A DNA stretch of 64,000 nt from Utricularia gibba (GCA_002189035.1 CM007989.1:7006001-7070000); one strand, 5' to 3'. Numbered from the stretch's first letter, positions 38,773-51,323 are shown. Program-made: numbers and translations. Notes: generated from the letters alone by a model not told the origin.

Positions 38773-39177
38773 TCAGATACCCATCACCCACACCCACGCA
38801 ACCATCAACCCAATAACAGAAACGCCGCGGCAGCGCTCCACGCCAGAGTAGTACGGGTATACCTGGTATATATTTCCCGGCGGCGCGTTTGTGTACGCGT
38901 AGGATGGTGTTGGTGGTGTTGGTGGTGCTGGGCGTGGCGACGGTGGCGGAGGTGGGCACAAAGTGGTCGGAGGTGGACGTGGCTTAATCGGGGGTGGCGG
39001 AGGCGAGGCACAGAGGTTGTCGCAGGGACAGTTGCCGCCGCACCTGTTGACGGAATCCGGCGAGGTTTGATCCTGAATCTGTCTTCTGGGATTCTCCAAA
39101 TATGACCCGTCTAGTAAATTCACGAAGAGGATGAGAATACAGATGGCGATCTGCAGAAGCTTCAGATCAGCAGCCAT
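38773..39177 (-). CDS. Small secreted proline-rich/extensin-like protein with Cys motif and hydrophobic C-terminus
   Basis: Signal-like MAADLKLLQIAICILILFVNLLDG; CGGNCPCDNLC; poly-Pro; YTNAPPGNIYQVYPYYSG resembles the YITGPPGNLYP motif of plant HRGP-like proteins; hydrophobic tail. Upstream in-frame ATGs exist to 39246. Confidence 0.8.
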   Translation of the reverse strand: MAADLKLLQIAICILILFVNLLDGSYLENPRRQIQDQTSPDSVNRCGGNCPCDNLCASPPPPPIKPRPPPTTLCPPPPPSPRPAPPTPPTPSYAYTNAPPGNIYQVYPYYSGVERCRGVSVIGLMVAWVWVMGI

Positions 39178-39792
39178 GAGACTGGAGACAGGGAGGATGA
39201 GCAAAGAAGGCTCCATTAATAATCCTTTGAGTTGAGCTGGAAACATTTAATATCAAAATTGGAAAAAAATCATTTTTATTTAAAAAATATGGAAAAAAAG
39301 GGATAAGGACAAGATAAGCGAGTGGTGGGAACATGAAAAAAGCAAATTCTTTTTCTCTCTGGCATCATCATCTTACATTAAATTAAACATTTTTTTTTGC
39401 ATTAAAATTATATTTTGTCTGATTTTTTTGAATATTAAATTCAACTGGGAAAAAAGGTGTAGGAAGTAGAGAGCAAGCGCTAGCCGAAGGAATCCGGGCA
39501 AAGTTTTGTCGAACCAGCAGTCCTCCGAGGTTCATCCCCAGGTTCGTTATCATGCCGACCTCGAGTTCCAGTAGAGTATTTATCTAAAGAATTACAGAAT
39601 TCAAGGCCTGATGATGTGTCCAATTCAAGGTCGAACAGACAATGAATCAGGGAGCAGAACTGGGAGGAGGACTGCTTGCCAGACAAGTATTGCAAGGAGA
39701 CCCACGGCGGCGGGGACGGAGGAAAGCGGTGGGCGGGGCCGGCTTCGACTAGAAGGGAACGTGGGACTTGGAAAATGAACGGCCATGTGCTG

Positions 39793-39801: not shown

Positions 39802-40259
39802 ATGCTCAGCCGAACTACGACCTGACCGGCTGTTGAAAGTTTTCCCTCAACAACCCTCTTACGGTTACGGGTAGCTACTAAATAAATGATGCCAACAAAC
39901 AAGCGTTTCTGCAATAATGGATTGCCTTGGTGGAGGAGCATTACTCTACCCCTCTGTGAAACAGCACATTCGATGTAAATGCAGTTGTGGGACTTTCAAA
40001 TTCAGCTTGCCGTAGCCAATGAACAGCTAGATTTACTGCTGTCATTTCAAAATGTTTCCTTTTTTGTTTTGTTTTTGAAGCGCGAAGTGGGATGCTGGAA
40101 TGAGGGAGTAGAAGTAGGTAGCATTCTTGAATCCCTCGGACACACTATTAGTGGCCACCTACCACCAGAACCTAACAAAATCCACTTGCAGACTGCCGTT
40201 TTATTACTTGTAAAAAGAAGTACATGGGGTGTCCTGAGCAAGCCTTGCTGTAGGAATGG

Positions 40260-40780
40260 GGGTCATTTTGAAAACTAATCACGGTTAAAATAACTCTTTA
40301 CAAAACTAACCATCGTTATCTTAATTTAGAAAACTATCCATCTTACTATTTATATGTATATATACGTATTATAAATGTAATAATTTGTATTTTATTAATA
40401 TAAAATATCCATTTTCAAAAAATAGAATCTACATATTTTTTTATTATAATATTTACATAAAATATTTTTATTTTATAAAACCTGACACAAAAATAATAAT
40501 ATATTATTTATTTAAAATATAAGTTTCAAAAACTTTTTATTAAATTGTCAGTACAATTTAAATTTTTTTTTAAAAATAAATTTGTATAAAGGTTTTGAAA
40601 AACAATTATTCTAGTTTTTCATAATCATAAATCTCTATTCCTTCAAATCAATTCTAAAAATTTAAAAATATTAATACATTTTTCAAAAAATTTATTATTA
40701 AACACTTTATTATTAAAGATTCAAAATTTCATATTTCCAAATATTTCTAAATTCAAAATGTCTATAATAAAATGAACAAT
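40260..40780 (+). repeat. Left terminal inverted repeat of the MULE
   Basis: e.g. TTTATATGTATATACGTATTATAAATGTAATAATTTGTATTTT and TTTATTATTAAACA...CATATTTCCAAATATTT reappear as reverse complements at 48190-48763. Confidence 0.88.
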
Positions 40781-42640
40781 ATAATTGTAAATTCTTATGA
40801 ATTAAATATACAAAAACAAATTAATGATGTTTTAATTATTTAAATTATATTAATTGATTTACATAAAAATTATAATTAAACACAATTTCATGTGTTACCC
40901 ACATCCATCGGCAATTCACACGGGCGTAGTCCTCAGCAACCCACACGAGCGTGGGTTATGTAACCCACGTCCGTGTGTCCTCACCAACTCACACGGACGT
41001 CCGTGTCCTCAGTATGACCCAGGTACGAGTCGGGTCAAGCACTTTACCCGCACAAGTTTGACCCACCGAGTCAGCCACTTAATTTTTGATCCGGTAGGTC
41101 GGACTCTTACTCGTACCAGTCCCACCCATACCAGCTCTAATTGTAATATAATCAATTGCGGTGATTATGTAAATAATATTTTCAAATGGTTAAGTTACTA
41201 TAATTAGCCGATTACACTGACTACGTAAATAATATTTAAAAATAGGAAAATCAATGTAATTACTTGATTGCGGTGACTATAAAAAAATATTTTAAAAAAC
41301 ATAAGTCACCGCAATTGTTAAATTTCGTAGATAATATTTTACATTTACTTTAAATATTGTTAAATTAAGAAAATAGTTGAATAAATATTTTTAAAGCATG
41401 ATAAATAAATTATTTAGTATTTTAATTTATAAATACTTAAAAAATTATAAATTTACTTTAAAACATTATATTTATTATTTAATTCTTTAAACCATTTTAT
41501 TGAAATAAAGAATATGTGATATATTTTCTTACATAAATCATTTGAACATTGCATGTTATTTGCATCAAATTCTTTTTTGAATACCTATGTTTTTATTTTA
41601 AATTTATATCATATATCATCCAATCTTTATTTATTATTTGAATCAAGTGTCTTTTATTTTCTTTGAAATTTGTATTATGTATTACTTAAATTTAAAATGT
41701 TATTTGGATTGACTTACTATTTTTTTATTTTATATTTGTTATACATCATACACTATAGTATTGTTTAGATTGTGTATATTTTTAATTTAAATGCCAAAGT
41801 ATTATTCCGAAGGTTTGACTTTTATTTATCATAAATTTGTATTATATATCATCTAATCATTAAATGTTATTTGGACATCTTGTTTATTTTATATTTTAAA
41901 TTCATGTTTTGTTATTTTTTCAAGTAATACTAAAGATTTTTTTCTCAAGTGTAATGAATGAAATAAAAAAATATTTGTTAATTTAAAATATATACAATAA
42001 GAAATAAATTTCAAATATATATAGATATTTTTTTGCTATTTTACTTAAAAATTCCTTGAAATTTGAATTTTACTACATGTTTATAATTATTTATTTTTAT
42101 AAATCATATAAATCTAATAGACTTATATATTTGTAAATGTTGTTCGTAATTTTTTTATACATGTTCGTACCATTTTTTAATGTTTTTATGAATAATGAAT
42201 AGAATTATTTAGGTAATATTAAGTACATAAGGTTTTTCAAATAAAAATTATACATTTTTAACACATTATGCATAGTTAAATATTATTTGTGTTCCTAAAA
42301 AATCATTTTTGGTTATCATTCGTAATAAAAAAAGATAGATTAAAACAATTTTACTAAAATATAAAATTTTTATCATTAATAATTATAGAAAAGAAAAGAA
42401 AAAATGAAAAAAAAAATAATACGTGAAGAGAATACATTGATTAAAAAATCCAAGTATTTTTTTAAAAATAAATATATAGATAACCATTGATGTCAATTAT
42501 TTCAACTAAAACTTAAATAAATAAGTTTTCTTAAAAAAATACCTATTTTTTTCTTCATCCAAAAACTTACGATTCTTTTGAAATTCTCAAAATACATTTT
42601 AAAATAAAAAAGGTCTTACATAAACAAATAGAAAAACATT

Positions 42641-44092
42641 TCAAAATAGTTGACGACAATACGGAAATAAAGGATGACACTGATCTATAGGCATTTGTCC
42701 AAAAAAATACCTACGGTAGTAATCTTCAACATCTTGTGCCAACCGTAATCCCTCAAGATAATTACGTATTTCACCACCTTCACCAAGTGCATTATCTTCA
42801 AGTTTGTCATAATTGTACGACTCCGGATGAATACAAGTATGCACCTATAAATATAAGTTAAACTCATAATGTTATAAAAGAAGGTAGATTGTAAAATTTA
42901 AAATGTAAAAAATGATATCTTACCGGATTTTTAATGCACTTGTAAGGTGAATCATCTATCAATAATGTATTATTGATATTGTAAACACCATTATATTCAT
43001 ACCAAACGTTTGCTAGCTTTTTTAAGACCACCTTCTTGAATGGCTTATCAATAATCTTTATGTCGGTTGGAGTAACATAAGATGCATCCCACTGAAATAT
43101 CCACTGACTTCGTCTACCAAATCCAAAAATCCATTGAAGTATTCATGACAATTGAGCCCTTAAAACATAATTAATAAAAATAGTGTTAGTTTTTAAAAGA
43201 ATGATAGTCTAAACATTATATGATACCCTCTACGTGATGACCAAATTGCAACATCAAATTGTTCAAGGCATCAATTCATGAATTCTCTAGCAAAAGGTCT
43301 CAAATACACTGCATATTCAAAAAAATATGTAAGGGAATTAATTTTGATAGCTAATTTGAAATAAAAAATCAAAGTTAATTAATGTAATAAAAAAATAATT
43401 GAATATCCATGAAATCAAATAATAAATAATTTTACCTTCTTGATGATATATTTTCATGTCCGGGATGCGAACATGACTATCTCTTGAAGTAGTTCTATAT
43501 GATGGTAGATCACAAAAGATCTCATTTACGTAAAAAATAATCAATTTACTTGCAATTGGAGGATCATTATAGATTACTTCAATTGATACCACTGATTCAT
43601 GAAATGATGATGTTTCTTCATGTTGTAAATTGACGGTTTCTAGCTCTAGTTCTTCATCTTCAGTAACATCATCATCATCCCTTAGCAAATTACGTCTCAC
43701 CGTACCACACCAAAATTTCTTTATTCCAGGAACTTCTAGAAATCGAGGCTCAATGTCTCAAAATGAAACTGTCTTACCCTCAAATAAATTCAAGTAGTGA
43801 TTTTTTTGCTCTACATCTAATAGAATAATACCAACATAGAATGAAAGAAATATGAGTACAAATGATAAATAAAAAGAATTTAATAAAATGTAAATTAATT
43901 AAAAAAACATAAAATACCTAGCAAAACAAGAAGGGTACAAAAAATAAAATTAATAATAAATTATCATACAATTCATAAAAAAAAATTCAAACTAAATTTA
44001 AATTCTAAAATCATTTATAACAAAATTAAAAGATTTTTTGATAGAAAATTGTTACCTTTTAGCTTGCCAACGCCATCTCCCCCAACTGCCAT
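42641..44092 (-). pseudogene. MULE-borne FCP1-homology/NIF (HAD-like, CTD-phosphatase-type) gene with introns and in-frame stops
   Basis: Exons 43700-43436, 43308-43227, 43158-42924 and 42844-42641 splice in phase: KLIIFYVNEIFCD...VYLRPFAREFMN*CLEQFDVAIWSSRR...IFQWDAS...KVVLKKLANVW...YNINNTLLIDDSPYKCIKNP|VHTCIHP..Y.....DNALGEGGEIRNYLEGL..AQDV..Y.....FGQ..I. This follows the plant NIF-domain consensus as recalled. Putative first exon 44092-44056. Confidence 0.8.
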
Positions 44093-44363
44093 TAGTTAAA
44101 ATCTAATCGATGATTATATAGTAGTGCAAACCATATGAAAGATGTTCTTCAATCATCATATCCGCTCTGTAAACCCCTAATCAACTTAATACCAGGTCTT
44201 CCTTGAAGTGTAAACCATTGGTTTTTTTGGTATAAGCACAGACGGTAATAGCAAAAAAAATGTCAAGATCAAGAGGTATATTTTTTTCATTGTAAATTTC
44301 CAAGAAGTCTAAAACATACCCTATTTATTTTAGGGTCAATTGCGCTAAGGGAACATCAATACA

Positions 44364-47317
44364 ATGAAGGATTGATAAAATAAATGACAAGATTGGTAAG
44401 CGTAATCCGCAACGAAAATGTTCGGTAGAAATAGCGATACCATTAGTAGAAACATATAGACTATTTTTTGGAGGCAATATACTCAACTACGGAAGTTACA
44501 TTTCTTATGACAAACCACCAATACGAATCATGCAATTTCACATTGATGCTACATTGGATGATCTACAATGTGAATTATAAGAGGTAATTCAAGTTTCAAC
44601 CTCTCTATATAATATGCGGCTCTCAGTGCAGTATTACGACTCTGAAAGCAGCGAAATGCGCTATATGCAACTATCATCTCAAATGGATTTACTCTTTTTG
44701 CACAACCCTAGTCATACCACTATTCCGGTAGATTTATTTATCATACTTGATAGTCATCGATTCAGTGCAAGATCTAGTGGAATTTATATTCCAGAACATT
44801 CATCTCAACCGCTTGGTTATTATCAAATACCGTATCTGAATGAGGTGGTTAGTGAGCACAACTCCTATGAATTCTTACAAGAGAATGAAGACAATTATGT
44901 AGAATATGACTTCGGTCCAGCTCCAAATATTGATGGTGATTCAATGATAAATTACAATAATGATTATGAAGTTCCTGGTGCAGATATTCCACATGAAGGA
45001 GATTCTGAAAACTTAGATTTGAGGTAGAAGATGAAGATCAAGAAGAAGATTTAGGGGATACAGAATGTGTACCAATGGCTGCTTTGGCAGAAGGGGGAGA
45101 CCCTTTAGATGAACCACTTTCACTGGTCTATGTTGATATTTTCTCGGAAGGACAACGGTTTTCTACAAAAGAAGATTTTCCTAGAGCAGTCCAAGACTTT
45201 TCAATACAAATTGGAAAAGAGTACACAGTCGTTGATAGTGAACCAAGAGTGCTTGCTATGATATGTAAACATCACAAAGAAACCAACTGTAAATGGAGAA
45301 TCCGTGCCGCTTATCATAAAAAGATTGGAGTGGAAAATTACTAAGCACACTGACCCTCACACGTGTAGACGGCTCGGAGTTGGTTTTTTCCGGCACAAAA
45401 ATGTGAATTCAGCATACATTGCGAAGATAGCGAAACCATTTGTGGAAGCAGATACAGGTACAAAGGTGGTGACAATAATTATTGATGTTGAAACTGCTAC
45501 TGGTTACAAAATCCCGTATCATCGTGCATGGTATGGGCTACATAAAGCTTTCGAACTCATTTATGGTACTTGGGAGGTATCTTTGCAAAAACTTACGAGT
45601 TTTTTGAATGAGGTGGCTATTCAAAATCCTGGAACAGTGATTGATTGGAAACACAAAGGTGATGGTATTACTATGCACTATGTGTTTTGGTCATATGGTC
45701 CATGTATCCGTGCATATCAGCATTCAAAACTGGTTATATCAGTTGATGCAACTCTATACAACACTTATAGACACAAGTTATAATCGCAGAAACTCTATCA
45801 CCTAGTGGCAAGCTTCTTCCACTAGCTTTTGCCGTTGTTATTGAAGAGACCAATGATTCTTGGTTATGGTTTTTGGATAAAGTAGGAACTCACATCGCCC
45901 TTGATAAACCCACATGGCTTATTTCAGATAGGCATGAGTCAATAAAAAATGTTGCAAAATAGGTGCCTGCTTTCATGGAGGAATACAATGGATGCCACCG
46001 TTATTGTTTTCGTCATCTTCGTTCTAATTTTTTAGATCATTATAAGTCTGAAGATTTGAGAAGTCTATTTATTAAAGCGGCTTTGACGGGATATAAAGAG
46101 AAATTCACTGCTTATATGAAGAGAATTGAAGAGAATAATAGAAGTGCATTTGCATATTTGTCCAAGATGAAACCCGAAACATGGACAATATCGTTTGATG
46201 GATGTCGAAGGTTTGTCACCATGACGACCAATCAAGTCGAAGGGATGAATGCAGTACTTTGTGGAGCTTGGCATCTTCCTATTACTGCACTTGCGAAATA
46301 TTTCATCTCAATCATTTATATTTATAATTTTTTATAAGCATCAACTTAATATGATTACAAATTTGCAGGCCACTTTTGCAAGATGTAAAAAATACATTTG
46401 CGAAGGACTCGAAGAAGCAATGAAAGCTCAATCAAACAATGAAACACTGGTCAAACAAGCGCGTAAGTTATTTGATCACTAGGATAAACCTATCCCACAT
46501 ATGCGAGTGGAGATTTACAATCACATAGAAATGATCGTCCATGTACAAACCCGTAGGCATCAAAGTAACCCAACGAACGACAATGTGTGTATCGTACGGT
46601 TGAAAAATGGCACTTGTAGTTGTGGGAAGTAGCAAAACTACGGAGTACCATGCTCACATGCTCAACAGGTATTTATCGAAGAAAATATCTCCCTTTATTA
46701 ATATCATACATAACATTCACAAATATATTTCTATGTTGCAGTCTTGTAAATTGTTGAATGTCGACCCGATAATGTGTGTTAACCCATCGCTTTTGGTTCA
46801 ACAACTCATCACTATATTTCGCTCACAATTTCGTCCACTTCGAGCCGAGATTCATTGGACGCCAGGGCCATTCACTCTGAAGCATGATCCAACACGTAGG
46901 AGAGCTGTTAGTAGAGGCCGGTATCGTAGTAAACGATTTCAAATGTCGATGGATAGGGGTCGTGGGTGCGGCACTCGAGGTAAATCAACGAGAAATACTA
47001 ATCAACCTAATATTGAATCACCCCCAACTATGCATAGAGGTTCAGTGGATGAGGACCGTGGACGAGACAAATTTACAAGGGATACCATGCCAACCGAATT
47101 TGAATCAACCTCATCTATGCCGCCACGAATGCATAGAGCATCCGTCGACATTCCAAGAGAGGAACTATATGATCATTTCCATTATCCGCCGTGTGCCTCT
47201 GTTCAAGAACGTCCATCCAGCCTTCATTTGGACTTTGAAAACATACCTTCCACTTCCGGCCAAGGTTGCAAAAAAAAAAAAAAAAATAGCACGAAGAGCA
47301 CGGGATCGAATTAGTAG
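44364..47317 (+). pseudogene. MuDR/MULE transposase with SWIM zinc finger, broken by stops and frameshifts
   Basis: MuDR block FSEGQRFSTKE...CKWRIRA, WKITKHTDPHTC, YHRAWYG, VFWSYGPC, VISVDAT, LLPLAFAVV, SWLWFL, LISDRHESI, HRYCFRHLRSNF, MTTNQVEGMN, SWIM CSCGK*QNYGVPCSHA. In-frame stops at 44578, 45960, 46480 and 46630. Confidence 0.93.
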
Positions 47318-48189
47318 TCCATTCAGGTAAAGAAAATATCTATTTATCCCTACTAAATGTATCTTATTTCAATTTGTATCTTTTTATCTAATTAATTAAA
47401 TGGATTCAACGTTATTTATAGATAGTAAAATCCAAGTTAATATAATACTATCGTAATTAACATAAAGCATTTTAATTTATTTGATCATCATTTATCTATG
47501 ATGTTAAATGAAATCAAAATCATAATATTTTATAAATTATATACTTTTGGATATTATATTATTTCTCTTTAAGTAAAATACACATAATTTGTCAATAGTT
47601 AATTTGATCATCTAAATTTATTTTCTAATTAATTATCGATCAAATTCAATTTAATAAAATATATTATCTATTCATTATATCAATAAAAAGGTTCAATCAA
47701 ATAAATTTAAATAATAACATATTTTTACGAATTATAATTAATTTTTTTATAGTTTATTAATGTACCTTATAGTTTTTATAAATTAAAGTATTAAATAATT
47801 TATTTACACTATTTAAAAAATATTTTTTTAAGTATTTGTTTTAAATTTAATGATATTTAAAATAAATCTAAAATATCATCTGTAGAATCAAATAATTATG
47901 ATGATTTACTTTTTTAAATAACTATTTACATAGTTATCGCAATCATGTGATTGCAGTGACTTACGTATTTTAAAACATTATTTATATAGTCACTGCAACG
48001 ATTGGTGACTATATAAATAATATTTAAAAATAGGTAGGTCACCGTAATTAATCGATTGCAGTGAGTACCCAATTAATCGAATTTTTTTTGTTTTATTTTG
48101 GTAACTTTCTTTTTACTTAATAATAGAGAGTAAATTGTCATGTATCTTATAACGGAGAACATTTTTTTGATGGAGGGTCATTTTTGTTT

Positions 48190-48763
48190 AATTAGAGATA
48201 TTTTTTTAATCTAAAAATATTTGGAAATATGAATTTTGGAAACTTTAATAATAAAATGTTTAATAATAAAATTTTTGAAAAATGAATTAATTCTTTTAAA
48301 TTTTTAGAATTGATTTAAAAGAAAAGAGATTTATGATTCTGAAAAACCAGAATAATTTTTTTTCAAAATTTTTTAAAATATTTATTTTAAAAAAATTAGA
48401 TTGTTCTAACAATTTAATAAAAAGTTTTTCAAACTTCTATTTTAAATAAGTAATATATTATTATTTTTATATAATAATAACCAATTCTTTTTTTAATGAA
48501 TATTTTTTTTATTAATAATTTTGATATTATAGATACAAGTTTAATAAAAAAAAATTATGTAAATATTATAATAAAAATATGTAGATTCCATTTATTGAAA
48601 ATGGATATTGCATATTAACAAAATACAAATTATTACATTTATAATACGTATATACATATAAACAGTAACATAGATAGTTTTTTAAATTCAGATGTACACA
48701 GTTAACACGATGTATAGTTTTCTAAATAGATATTTTTACAATGGTTAGTTTTAAAAATGAATC
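48190..48763 (-). repeat. Right terminal inverted repeat of the MULE
   Basis: Reverse complement aligns with 40260-40780, starting GATTCATTTTTAAAACTAACC versus GGGTCATTTTGAAAACTAATC. Confidence 0.88.
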
Positions 48764-48796
48764 GTAGTAATGGGCGAAACCTGCAAGCATTCCTGT

Positions 48797-49142: not shown

Positions 49143-51323
49143 ATGTATTCGGCTTTTTACCTGGCCCCAGCACCAACAGCGAAGCCCTTTTCGAGAAGGT
49201 TAGTGAACAAACCAGCGTTTCCAGTTTTATCATAGACTTCTCGTTTTCGAATTTTTCGTTTAGTTTTTTTTTTATGTTGCTAAAAACCGAAGATTGGTTG
49301 CCCAAATGTTGTCTGGAGTTAACACCACAATTCCACCTGGGTTGCTGGCGGTGAAGCCTCCGGCGCATCCGACGTATGATTTGAAGGCTGTCATAAAGCT
49401 TGCACTGGCCGAGGACTCCGGGGATCGAGGTTTTTTTTTTTTTTTTGCTCGTTAAACAGATAAAAATTGTTTCTTTGTGGTGTTTATCGTTGATAGTGGA
49501 TAATTGGAATCGTGTGATTTCAGCTAATTTTTGCGTATTAATGGGTATAGAGATGAGAATTTTTTGGCGAGTTTAGGAGATTGCGCCTACTAGCTTTTAC
49601 CGCGATACTTATTCACTAATTCAAATGAGTGTTTAGTGATTGGGAGCGTAGACAGATGAAATGGTCATGTTTCTGATAAACAGGGCCTTCTGTGGGATTG
49701 AAATGGATGAACTTCGCCATTGTTTTGAATGTTTCATTCTGTTGATGTGTTTGTTTCTGAAGCAAGAACCACTTGTTTCCTGATTCTTCTCTGGAATACA
49801 TAACTGCCATCCAGTAGATGTTTTGTATTGCAATGCTTGAAGTTAAGGTGGGGATTTTCCTAACAGGGGATGTGACTTGCAAAGCAACAATACCTTCTGA
49901 AATGGAGGTGGAGGCCCATTTTTTGGCAAAAGAGGATGGGATTGTTGCTGGTGTTGCGCTAGCAGAAATGATATTTAATGAAGTTGATCCCTCCCTCAAG
50001 GTAAAAATCGAGTTTTTTGTTCCATTCTCTCCAAATTCATGTTCTGGTTTGAACAAACGTGTCAATTACTACCGTTAGCTTCTATAATCCATCAGATACA
50101 GTGGCTGAGAAAAGATGGTGATTCTGTCTTCAAAGGCCTGGAATTCGGCAAAGTACATGGTGTGTAAAATCCTTGGAAATTTCATCATGGGATGTTGTAT
50201 ATTATCTCCATACAAGCATTTTCACTGATTTTTCCCCTGCTTCACAATGAGATGTTGCAGGAAGAGCACACAGCATTGTTGTTGCTGAAAGGGTTGTGCT
50301 CAACTTCATGCAGAGGATGAGTGGAATAGCTACTTTAACCAAAGTATGCATCCAAATGAGCCTGTGCTATGAATGAATGCGCTAGTCCTTGAGAACATCA
50401 TCCTGAGTGCTGTTGAAATTCTTAGGCTATGGCAGACGCTGCTCACCCTGCACGCATCTTAGAAACCAGGAAAACTGCTCCAGGCTTGCGTCTGGTGGAC
50501 AAGTGGGCGGTATCATTCTATCAGATTCTCCTCTAGACTTGCACCATCTCCAAAGTTTCTTGATCCATGAGTTTCTTTGCTGTAGGTGTTGATTGGTGGG
50601 GGTCAAAACCATCGCATGGGCCTGTTCGACATGGTTATGATAAAAGATAACCATATATCAGTAGCAGGGGGCATTTCTAATGCTCTGAAAGCTGTGGATA
50701 CTTACCTGGAGCAGAACAGGATCGAGATGGCTGTGGAGGTAGTTCTTGTCTGGCCATAGTTTCCATGTACTCTTCCGGATCTCAAGTCCTGGCACGGTTT
50801 CAGGTCGAAACGAGGACATTAGATGAAGTAAACGAAGTGCTGGACTACGCATCATCAAACAAAACATCCCTGTCCAGGATCATGCTGGACAACATGGTAG
50901 TCCCCTTGTCCAATGGGATGTTGATGTTTCCATGCTCGAACAAGCCGTGCGAGTGATCGATGGAAGGTTCGAGACTGAGGTATGATAGAAGCTGTGCCTC
51001 CATTAATCCTTGATCTGCACTGGAAATGTGAATGTTGCATTTGTCAATTATGCTGTTGTTGTTCTTTCTGTGGTTAGGCTTCTGGAAATGTTACTCTGGA
51101 GACAGTGAACAAGATAGGACAGTCTGGGGTGACATTCATCTCCAGGTTCCAGTTAAAACGCCAAATACGTTTCTGTGAATGATCTGATCTCTCATCTTTG
51201 CACCATTTCTGCTTCTTTCCCTGCAGTGGCGCCTTGACGCACTCCGTCAAAGCACTCGACATTTCACTGAAAATCGACATGGCACTCGCACTTGAAGTCG
51301 GAAGGCGAACAAACCGGGCGTGA
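49143..51323 (+). CDS. QPT: Quinolinate phosphoribosyltransferase (nicotinate-nucleotide pyrophosphorylase), with transit peptide; one apparent homopolymer frameshift at 50915-50917
   Basis: [141 protein letters not shown]. Confidence 0.95.

What the first reader, a model, noticed from the sequence alone, without database searches (positions are those of the whole stretch)
42641..44092. Mutator-like element carries an intron-containing FCP1/NIF (CTD-phosphatase-like) gene as a second cistron
Seen: between the TIRs, on the strand opposite the transposase, four exons with GT-AG borders splice into a near-complete NIF/FCP1-homology HAD domain (YLRPF...WSS, QWD, LKKLANVW, NTLLIDDSPYK..NP, LGEGGEIRNYLEGL, FGQ). 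Its putative ATG (44092) is about 270 bp head-to-head with the transposase start (about 44364). The position of the HAD nucleophile Asp (family pattern LVLDxNG) reads IIFYVNE, a Tyr at 43530-43532. Known: MULE lineages carry accessory genes such as Ulp1-like proteases (KAONASHI), plant mobile domains, mudrB and the anti-silencing VANC proteins. I do not recall an FCP1/NIF domain as MULE cargo. Inference: this is either a one-off Pack-MULE capture or a lineage-wide accessory gene. The protein is strongly diverged from host-type NIF proteins yet keeps every motif block in order, which favours a period of selection inside the element. A phosphatase or pseudophosphatase of this fold could act on polymerase CTDs or silencing factors; that part is speculation.
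Basis: partly seen in the sequence, partly recalled or inferred. Interest (0 to 1): 0.82.

Follow-up and report, generated by a model that had tools for sequence, protein, structure and literature searches.

The report
Dead MULE with phosphatase-like passenger gene
A decayed copy of a plant "Mutator-like" jumping gene carries, beside its broken transposase, a broken spliced gene whose phosphatase-like domain descends from an ordinary plant gene. That gene seems to have been kept readable until about when this copy landed; I found no published description of such cargo, but this copy is dead and its function is untested.

Summary
The exons are real. Four minus-strand exons (43757-42644) with GT-AG borders and compatible phases splice into an NIF/FCP1-homology domain (150-166 bits, 32-41% identity to plant PF03031 proteins). 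The supposed "intergenic" DNA upstream holds a probable Transposase_28-like (TRP28) remnant (44486-44328) on the gene's strand. The + strand ATG at 44364 opens no frame; transposase homology starts at 45075.

The element is a MULE (about 0.5 kb TIRs, 10/11 TSD-like repeat). Its transposase is broken by frame changes and stops, so the whole copy is dead.

All three introns match a host NIF gene in position and phase, so the domain came from genomic DNA. Two stops, against about 8 expected under neutral drift to this divergence, and preferential retention of conserved columns (p = 0.0008) indicate long purifying selection before death. The two stops fit neutral decay since insertion.

I could not recover other copies myself. 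The scan has reported TRP28-NIF genes in transposons at nine other places in this genome; those notes are untested here. I found no published description. Function is unknown.

The parts
40250..40260 (.). Left copy of a probable 11-bp target-site duplication
   Evidence: 10 of 11 bases match 48764-48774. The best 13-mer match (11/13) was reached by 2 of 5000 shuffles of the flanks.
40261..40775 (+). Left terminal inverted repeat of the MULE
   Evidence: Local alignment of 40263-40775 with the reverse complement of 48178-48760 gives 450/504 aligned bases identical. The two outer bases follow from the TSD.
42641..42844 (-). NIF-like gene, exon D (67 codons plus stop codon 42643-42641)
   Evidence: Acceptor AG at 42846-42845, phase 0. 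tblastn hits from many NIF proteins, up to 64.7 bits. It lacks the intron that the host genes L002 and L003 have in this stretch.
42924..43158 (-). NIF-like gene, exon C (holds the family's L-L-[LVI]-D-D-S-P-Y-K motif and the second in-frame TGA)
   Evidence: AG at 43160-43159 and GT at 42923-42922. 180 hits at E <= 1e-3 in 1.84 billion proteins. DD motif kept.
43143..43145 (-). In-frame TGA stop no. 2
   Evidence: Translation of the spliced frame. It aligns with a column whose commonest residue is Arg.
43227..43308 (-). NIF-like gene, exon B (Y-L-R-P-F ... W-S-S)
   Evidence: AG at 43310-43309 and GT at 43226-43225. Phases 1 and 2 are identical to the host gene in L003.
43271..43273 (-). In-frame TGA stop no. 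1
   Evidence: Translation. It aligns with a Phe present in 227 of 231 relatives.
43436..43757 (-). NIF-like gene, exon A: open frame without ATG, an acidic stretch and a degenerate motif I (I-I-F-Y-V-N-E)
   Evidence: Donor GT at 43435-43434. The alignment places I-I-F-Y-V-N-E on L-D-V-N-G of relatives. A possible acceptor at 43737-43736 was read.
43530..43532 (-). Tyr codon at the position of the HAD nucleophile Asp
   Evidence: D in 222 of 231 relatives.
44056..44092 (-). It is phase-compatible with the acceptor at 43736 but otherwise unsupported.
   Evidence: No homologue matches it. There is a stop two codons upstream. It may be the tail of the decayed upstream exon (inference).
44328..44486 (-). 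Probable Transposase_28-like (TRP28) remnant, ended by an in-frame stop at 44327-44325
   Evidence: PF04195 E = 0.0044, 17.6 bits (below the 26.2 cut-off), residues 20-51 on profile positions 3-34 of 69. Atlas feature search: first hit 0.95 with 202/256 shared features, and 58 of 100 hits fall in the PF04195 set. It has the same strand and codon phase as exon A.
45075..45341 (+). Transposase, MuDR-type DNA-binding domain
   Evidence: PF03108 E = 2.2e-7, 30.9 bits. Reading continues in another frame after about 45340.
45771..45959 (+). Transposase, MULE catalytic domain fragment
   Evidence: PF10551 E = 2.2e-7, 31.7 bits, profile positions 26-80 of 99 only. The preceding part lies in another frame (that frame closes at 45781-45783), and an in-frame stop follows at 45960-45962.
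46630..46632 (+). In-frame stop inside the SWIM-like C-x-C ... C-x-H motif of the transposase
   Evidence: Read by eye from the three-frame translation. No Pfam hit for the fragments. A further stop lies at 46480-46482.
48178..48763 (-). Right terminal inverted repeat of the MULE
48764..48774 (.). Right copy of the probable target-site duplication

Best explanation
This is a dead, roughly 8.5 kb autonomous-type Mutator-like element (40261-48763). Besides its now broken MuDR-type transposase (+ strand, from 45075) it carries, on the opposite strand, the remains of an accessory gene.

The accessory gene consists of a probable TRP28-like (Transposase_28) N-terminal part (44486-44328), followed after an AT-rich intron by four exons encoding an NIF/FCP1-homology, UBLCP1-like HAD domain (43757-42644).

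Shown:
- The NIF part descends from an intron-containing plant gene. All three of its introns sit at the same codon and phase as in a host gene.
- It has diverged very far from all sampled host-type proteins.
- It is now a pseudogene: two TGA stops, and the nucleophile Asp is Tyr.

Inferred:
- Most of that divergence happened while the frame was under purifying selection, most likely as a transposon-borne TRP28-NIF accessory gene.
- This copy was probably intact when it inserted. It has since decayed neutrally together with the transposase and the TIRs.
- Nothing works at this locus today.

In active ancestors the protein was most likely a phosphoprotein-binding module or a weak phosphatase. 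The parent subfamily already has D-x-N-G in place of D-x-D-x-T/V. It would have been recruited by the transposon, with an unknown target.
For: - MULE identity: TIRs 89% identical over 504 aligned bases, a 10/11 TSD-like repeat, PF03108 and PF10551.
- Transposase decay: frame changes near 45340 and 45785, and stops at 45960-62, 46480-82 and 46630-32.
- NIF homology: exon C best E = 5.3e-15 in 1.84 billion proteins; 18 of the 19 hits scanned whole are PF03031; the spliced peptide scores up to 156 bits per domain.
- Pseudogene state: two in-frame TGAs and Asp to Tyr.
- Genomic origin: intron 1 (phase 1, in the Val codon), intron 2 (phase 2) and intron 3 (phase 0, after Asn-Pro) coincide with those of the gene for P0045 in L003.
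- Past selection, columns: 44/60 columns that are >= 90% conserved in relatives are kept, against 15/42 and 10/53 in less conserved classes; likelihood-ratio p = 0.0008 against uniform retention.
- Past selection, stops: neutral drift to 40% identity gives a mean of 8.3 stops in 223 codons, and 0 of 400 runs had 2 or fewer.
- Timing: half the TIR divergence (0.058 per site) predicts 2.3 stops in 278 codons; 2 are seen.
- TRP28-like remnant.
- No nested-element borders around the gene.
Against: - I recovered no second copy, so selection inside the element, as opposed to in a divergent host paralogue before capture, is not shown.
- The TRP28-like hit is below Pfam's gathering score and covers half a domain. 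The adjoining pieces got no support.
- Physical linkage of the TRP28-like part and the NIF exons in one transcript is inferred from strand, order and frame only.
- None of 98 segments flanking the NIF domain in the protein hits of the exon C search carries PF04195 or a transposase domain. Two searches for element-type relatives were blank.
- The timing argument assumes that the TIRs were identical at insertion.
Confidence: 0.68

Rival explanations
1. One-off Pack-MULE-style capture. This element picked up a fragment of a host NIF gene once, and the fragment has drifted neutrally ever since. It was never an accessory gene.
For: The introns are retained at host positions, as expected for DNA-level transduplication. 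No other copy could be retrieved here. NIF proteins in the databases show no transposon domains. The copy is a pseudogene.
Against: Neutral drift to 32-41% identity should leave about 8 stops plus indels; 2 stops and no frameshift are seen. Conserved columns are kept preferentially. A TRP28-like remnant, a transposon-type domain, lies directly upstream on the same strand. The element carries a transposase, so it is not a Pack-MULE by definition. A capture from an already very divergent host paralogue would escape the first two arguments.
Confidence: 0.15
2. Nested insertion. The TRP28-NIF gene belongs to another mobile element (for example a hAT, a PIF/Harbinger or a retrotransposon fragment) that inserted into the MULE, so it is not MULE cargo.
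For: Transposase_28 is known from extra ORFs of Retand LTR retrotransposons (PMC6317226). Untested notes of this scan place TRP28-NIF genes next to hAT and PIF/Harbinger transposases too.
Against: No inverted or direct repeats with the look of element ends flank 42.4-44.6 kb; there are only AT-rich chance matches. Inverted similarity between the MULE arms continues inward to 41212-41534 and 47649-47998, so the gene lies well inside a coherent element. Short hAT-type ends in 25% GC DNA could be missed.
Confidence: 0.12
3. The gene is still functional. The stops would be assembly errors, read through, or avoided by alternative splicing, and the Tyr variant would act as a pseudophosphatase.
For: Only two lesions lie in 280 codons. 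The splice sites are intact. The downstream motifs W-S-S and D-D-S-P-Y-K are kept.
Against: There are two independent TGAs, one at a 98% conserved Phe. The upstream TRP28-like part and the transposase are also riddled with stops. No start codon is supported. No RNA run was listed as holding the stretch. 17 of 61 highly conserved columns are lost, including the stop at the conserved Phe.
Confidence: 0.03

Closest known systems
Plant host-type NIF/FCP1-homology proteins (PF03031). They are annotated automatically as 'uncharacterized FCP1 homology domain-containing protein C1271.03c-like' or 'ubiquitin-like domain-containing CTD phosphatase 1'. The nearest solved structure is UBLCP1, PDB 3SHQ.
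   Same: The same domain from motif I to the C-terminal F-G-Q block. Three introns are shared in position and phase. W-S-S and D-D-S-P-Y-K are kept. The host family relates to UBLCP1 at E = 3.2e-7.
   Different: Identity is only 32-41%, and the terminal branch is about ten times the median. The nucleophile Asp is Tyr, and there are two stops. It lies inside a MULE with a TRP28-like remnant upstream, whereas the host genes examined have no transposase within 10 kb and no transposon domains in their proteins. One or two host introns are missing.
Accessory genes of autonomous MULEs: mudrB of MuDR, VANB/VANC of VANDAL21, and the Ulp1-like protease of KAONASHI (from general knowledge, not tested here).
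   Same: A second gene inside the TIRs of a transposase-bearing MULE. The evidence suggests it was kept as a reading frame rather than being random captured DNA.
   Different: A different protein fold (HAD/NIF). No Pfam hit to Peptidase_C48, PMD or other known MULE cargo in the pieces scanned. Its orientation is divergent from the transposase, whereas mudrA and mudrB are convergent. Its function is unknown, and no anti-silencing activity is shown.
Pack-MULEs / Pack-TYPE transposons (PMC5861414, PMC8903248; from titles and abstracts listed).
   Same: Host gene sequence acquired at the DNA level with its introns, lying between MULE TIRs.
   Different: Pack-MULEs are non-autonomous and usually carry fragments. 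Here a transposase gene is present, and almost the whole domain was kept readable over a very long divergence.
Transposase_28 (PF04195) extra ORFs of Retand Ty3/gypsy retrotransposons (PMC6317226).
   Same: A transposon-associated domain of unknown function. The 53-residue remnant at 44486-44328 resembles its first half.
   Different: Here it sits in a DNA transposon and apparently upstream of an NIF domain. The match is below Pfam's threshold.

Membership tests
NIF / FCP1-homology HAD phosphatases (PF03031) | Significant sequence similarity over the whole domain | tested here: met
   Spliced peptide (X at the stops) against proteins that themselves hit PF03031: up to 156 bits per domain, covering residues 59-279. 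A direct hmmscan of single exons gave no hit. The joined peptide could not be submitted by reference.
NIF / FCP1-homology HAD phosphatases (PF03031) | Motif I D-x-D-x-(T/V) with the nucleophile Asp | tested here: not met
   The window reads F-Y-V-N-E, with Tyr at the Asp position. The parent plant subfamily has D-x-N-G (D 222/231, N 220/231), so it also lacks the second Asp.
NIF / FCP1-homology HAD phosphatases (PF03031) | Motif II Ser/Thr and motif IV acidic pair | tested here: met
   W-S-S and L-L-I-D-D-S-P-Y-K are present.
NIF / FCP1-homology HAD phosphatases (PF03031) | Phosphatase activity | not testable with these tools
Mutator-like element (MULE) | Long terminal inverted repeats | tested here: met
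   40263-40775 against 48760-48178, 450/504 identical.
Mutator-like element (MULE) | Target-site duplication of 9-11 bp | tested here: met
   11 bp, 10/11 identical, directly outside the ends. 2 of 5000 shuffles reach the 13-mer score. The ends differ by one indel.
Mutator-like element (MULE) | MuDR-type transposase (DBD, MULE DDE domain, SWIM finger) | tested here: met
   PF03108 at 30.9 bits and PF10551 at 31.7 bits, both above their cut-offs. The SWIM-like motif was seen by eye only. The gene is broken by frame changes and stops.
Pack-MULE | Non-autonomous: no transposase gene between the TIRs | tested here: not met
   A transposase gene is present, though decayed.
Transposase_28 (PF04195) domain proteins | Score above Pfam's gathering threshold over the domain | tested here: inconclusive
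   17.6 bits against a cut-off of 26.2, E = 0.0044, first half of the profile only. The atlas feature search supports it (0.95, 202 shared features). The next pieces got no support.
Lineage-wide transposon accessory gene (TRP28-NIF) | Several element copies share the gene, with dN/dS below 1 | not testable with these tools
Only untested notes of this scan report other copies.

The most novel reading that the evidence does not exclude
TRP28-NIF is a real, so far undescribed family of transposon helper proteins. It joins a transposon-type TRP28 domain to a UBLCP1-like phosphatase or pseudophosphatase domain taken from a host gene. It would have been kept by selection in cut-and-paste transposons (MULEs, perhaps also hAT and PIF/Harbinger elements) of this plant lineage, acting on a host phosphoprotein such as the polymerase CTD or a silencing factor to favour the element.
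Probability: 0.3. Interest if true: 0.8.

Novelty: new variant of a known kind. Interest (0 to 1): 0.5.

Why it matters
Autonomous plant DNA transposons with a second, selected gene are few: mudrB, the VAN genes and the KAONASHI protease. They have been informative about how transposons deal with host silencing.

A phosphatase-fold accessory gene would be a new entry in that short list, and a testable one: find intact copies, express them, assay activity and binding partners.

This particular locus adds three things:
- The architecture of a TRP28-like part followed by NIF exons, inside MULE ends.
- Proof of a genomic, intron-bearing origin of the NIF domain.
- A quantitative argument that the frame was maintained until about the time of insertion.

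On its own it is a pseudogene with no present function.

Tried and rejected
- Frameshift in exon C. I first read a frameshift there. Working out the splice phase showed that the frame is continuous and holds a second TGA instead.
- Direct Pfam scans of single exons gave no NIF hit.
- Searches for element-type relatives were blank: the 120-aa exon A ORF and the 53-aa TRP28-like ORF. A profile of P0009 plus the window's pieces returned only host-type proteins of 32-41% identity.
- 98 segments flanking the NIF domain in database proteins carry no PF04195 and no transposase domain.
- Contexts of P0008, P0045 and P0062 are ordinary genes without a MuDR transposase. P0148 and P0066 are not on record.
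I therefore have no read-level check of the stops, no copy-number profile and no RNA evidence. One local self-comparison of the element against the window inside the sandbox did include them.
- No RNA run was listed as holding the gene.
- A frame-shifted continuation of the TRP28-like region (44262-44152), which I recalled as family-like, got no support. Neither did 44324-44184.
- A findings search by sequence was blank.
- Paper searches for MULE or Pack-MULE together with CTD phosphatase, NIF, FCP1 homology or PF03031 found nothing relevant.
- No second copy, and no other NIF fragment, lies in the window.

Full report
**The element.** The window is plant DNA, and the finding lies in a 25% GC stretch.
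- Long inverted repeats bound an 8.5 kb unit. 40263-40775 pairs with 48760-48178, with 450 of 504 aligned bases identical. Weaker inverted similarity continues inward to 41212-41534 and 47649-47998.
- Directly outside the ends lie G-T-A-G-G-A-A-T-G-G-G (40250-40260) and the same 11-mer with one change (48764-48774). Only 2 of 5000 shuffles of the flanks reach the observed 13-mer score. I read this as an 11-bp target-site duplication, typical of MULEs, and place the ends at 40261 and 48763.

**The transposase.** On the + strand there is a MuDR-type transposase.
- PF03108 (DNA-binding domain) hits 45075-45341: E = 2.2e-7, 30.9 bits.
- PF10551 (MULE domain) hits 45771-45959: E = 2.2e-7, 31.7 bits, profile positions 26-80 of 99 only.
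- The gene is broken:
  - The reading passes from one frame to another near 45340, inside the DNA-binding region.
  - It changes frame again near 45785, inside the MULE domain, where there is no room for an intron.
  - In-frame stops lie at 45960-45962, 46480-46482 and 46630-46632. The last sits within a C-x-C ... C-x-H SWIM-like motif that I recognise by eye only.
- So this is a decayed copy of an autonomous-type MULE.

**The NIF-like gene: what is confirmed.**
- On the minus strand, four exons have canonical borders and compatible phases:

| Exon | Coordinates | Note |
|---|---|---|
| A | 43757-43436 | open frame without ATG |
| B | 43308-43227 | |
| C | 43158-42924 | |
| D | 42844-42644 | stop codon at 42643-42641 |

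- Exon C alone (64 residues) finds 180 proteins at E <= 1e-3 among 1.84 billion representatives, best 5.3e-15.
- 18 of the 19 hits that I scanned whole are PF03031 NIF proteins, with E values down to 1e-42; the 198-aa P0008 gave no Pfam hit.
- The spliced peptide, read with X at the stops, aligns from motif I to the C-terminal F-G-Q block. It scores up to 156 bits per domain and 32-41% identity.

- The frame holds two TGAs. One is at 43273-43271, at a Phe kept in 227 of 231 relatives. The other is at 43145-43143, at a column where Arg is commonest.
- 17 of the 61 columns that are at least 90% conserved in relatives are lost, counting the stop at the conserved Phe. Among them are the Asp and the Gly of motif I.
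- The ATG at 44092 has a stop two codons upstream and no homology support. Its donor (GT at 44055-44054) is phase-compatible with an acceptor at 43737-43736 (read).
- The stretch 44486-44328 on the minus strand, in the same codon phase as exon A, matches Transposase_28 (PF04195). The match has E = 0.0044 and 17.6 bits, below the 26.2 cut-off, with residues 20-51 on profile positions 3-34 of 69.
- The atlas feature search gives PF04195 clusters as its first hits: 0.95, 202 of 256 shared features, and 58 of 100 hits in that family set.
- This remnant is ended by a stop at 44327-44325. The adjoining pieces got no support.
The sequence evidence is my own, but it is sub-threshold.

**Origin of the NIF part.** I compared the gene with the gene for P0045 (locus L003), which has no transposase within 10 kb.
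- All three of the window's introns coincide with host introns in position and phase:

| Intron | Phase and position | Window | L003 |
|---|---|---|---|
| 1 | phase 1, splits a Val codon after its first base | G\|TG | G\|TT |
| 2 | phase 2 | GG\|G | AG\|G |
| 3 | phase 0, after Asn-Pro; Val-His follows | CCG\| | CCG\| |

- The host gene has two further introns, one after the Trp of C-W-D and one inside what is exon D here. L002 lacks the first of them.
- The domain therefore derives from genomic DNA of a host-type gene, not from a retrocopy.

**Evidence for past selection.**
- The window's sequence has the longest terminal branch of 232 domains: 1.53 against a median of 0.16. Its placement in the tree is unsafe.
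- Divergence is not uniform. It keeps 44 of 60 columns that are at least 90% conserved, 15 of 42 at 70-90% and 10 of 53 at 50-70%. A likelihood-ratio test against a single retention rate gives p = 0.0008.
- In simulations, neutral substitution down to 40% amino-acid identity leaves a mean of 8.3 stops in 223 codons. None of 400 runs had two or fewer. Two stops and no frameshift are observed.
- Most of the divergence therefore accumulated while the frame was maintained.
- If the TIR arms were identical at insertion, each has since taken about 0.058 changes per site. That rate predicts 2.3 stops in the 278 sense codons, and 2 are seen. The gene may thus have been intact at insertion and have decayed with the rest of the element. 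This step rests on that assumption.

**What I could not show.**
- I recovered no other copy.
  - Two protein searches with element-specific pieces were blank.
  - A profile search returned only host-type proteins.
  - 98 segments flanking the NIF domain in database proteins carry neither PF04195 nor transposase domains.
  - The window holds no second copy.
There is therefore no read-level check of the stops, no copy-number estimate and no RNA evidence.
  - I sent those letters to no search tool afterwards.
  - A local self-comparison in the sandbox did include them.
- No RNA run was listed as holding the gene.
- The scan's notebook lists ten other reports of NIF-like genes in transposons of this same genome, nine of them described as TRP28-NIF. 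The transposons are described as MULE, hAT or PIF/Harbinger. These are unchecked notes. They agree with the architecture seen here but are not independent evidence.

**Nested insertion.** No repeat pair with the look of element ends flanks 42.4-44.6 kb. Short ends in such AT-rich DNA could escape detection.

**Comparison with known things.**
- The parent family is the plant UBLCP1-like NIF group. Its names are automatic, such as 'FCP1 homology domain-containing protein C1271.03c-like'. The nearest solved structure is UBLCP1, PDB 3SHQ, at E = 3.2e-7.
- That group has D-x-N-G rather than D-x-D-x-T/V: N in 220 of 231 domains. Even the host proteins may therefore not be ordinary phosphatases.
- Transposase_28 is known from extra ORFs of 23% of Retand retrotransposons (PMC6317226).
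- Paper searches combining MULE or Pack-MULE with CTD phosphatase, NIF, FCP1 homology or PF03031 found no description of such cargo. The library is partial.

**Verdict.**
- The locus is a dead copy.
- The interesting part is the gene family it points to: a transposon-borne TRP28-like plus NIF-like gene that was kept readable for a long time.
- Whether the family is lineage-wide, and what it does, remains to be tested on intact copies.

Noticed in passing
window 49294-51000 (+ strand): A quinolinate phosphoribosyltransferase gene lies just right of the element: PF02749 at 49818-50075 (E = 3.4e-8) and PF01729 at 50586-50756 (E = 3.9e-16). ORFs that look like its first exons start near 49294, about 0.5 kb from the MULE's right end. 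That fits the known MULE preference for 5' regions of genes.
   Followed up: partly
alignment of 231 plant NIF domains: The host-type plant subfamily has L-D-x-N-G-L-L in motif I: Asp in 222/231 and Asn at +2 in 220/231, with Asp at +2 only once. The general acid/base Asp of canonical FCP/SCP phosphatases is therefore missing family-wide.
   Followed up: partly
proteins P0001-P0007: The best hits to exon C are long proteins with two tandem NIF domains. Four of the scanned flanking segments carry DUF724 (best E = 7.5e-117) and one carries an Agenet domain. This NIF-NIF-DUF724 architecture was not examined further.
   Followed up: no
window 47939-48059: A 55-nt inverted repeat with an 11-nt spacer (82% complementary) lies just inside the right TIR. 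Related sequence sits at 41160-41279 near the left arm. These may be subterminal repeats, perhaps transposase-binding sites.
   Followed up: no
window 41592-41900: Three copies of a 76-nt AT-rich direct repeat (66-71% identity) lie between the left TIR and the 3' end of the NIF-like gene.
   Followed up: no
window 44614-45027 (+ strand): A 137-codon ORF lies upstream of the transposase's DNA-binding domain, in another frame, with no Pfam hit. It may be a decayed acidic N-terminal extension of the transposase. If so, only about 130 bp separate it from the TRP28-like remnant.
   Followed up: partly
window 38773-39246 (- strand): A 157-codon proline-rich ORF lies left of the element, with no Pfam hit. 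It may be an exon of a proline-rich or extensin-like gene.
   Followed up: no
I worked beside them afterwards.
   Followed up: no
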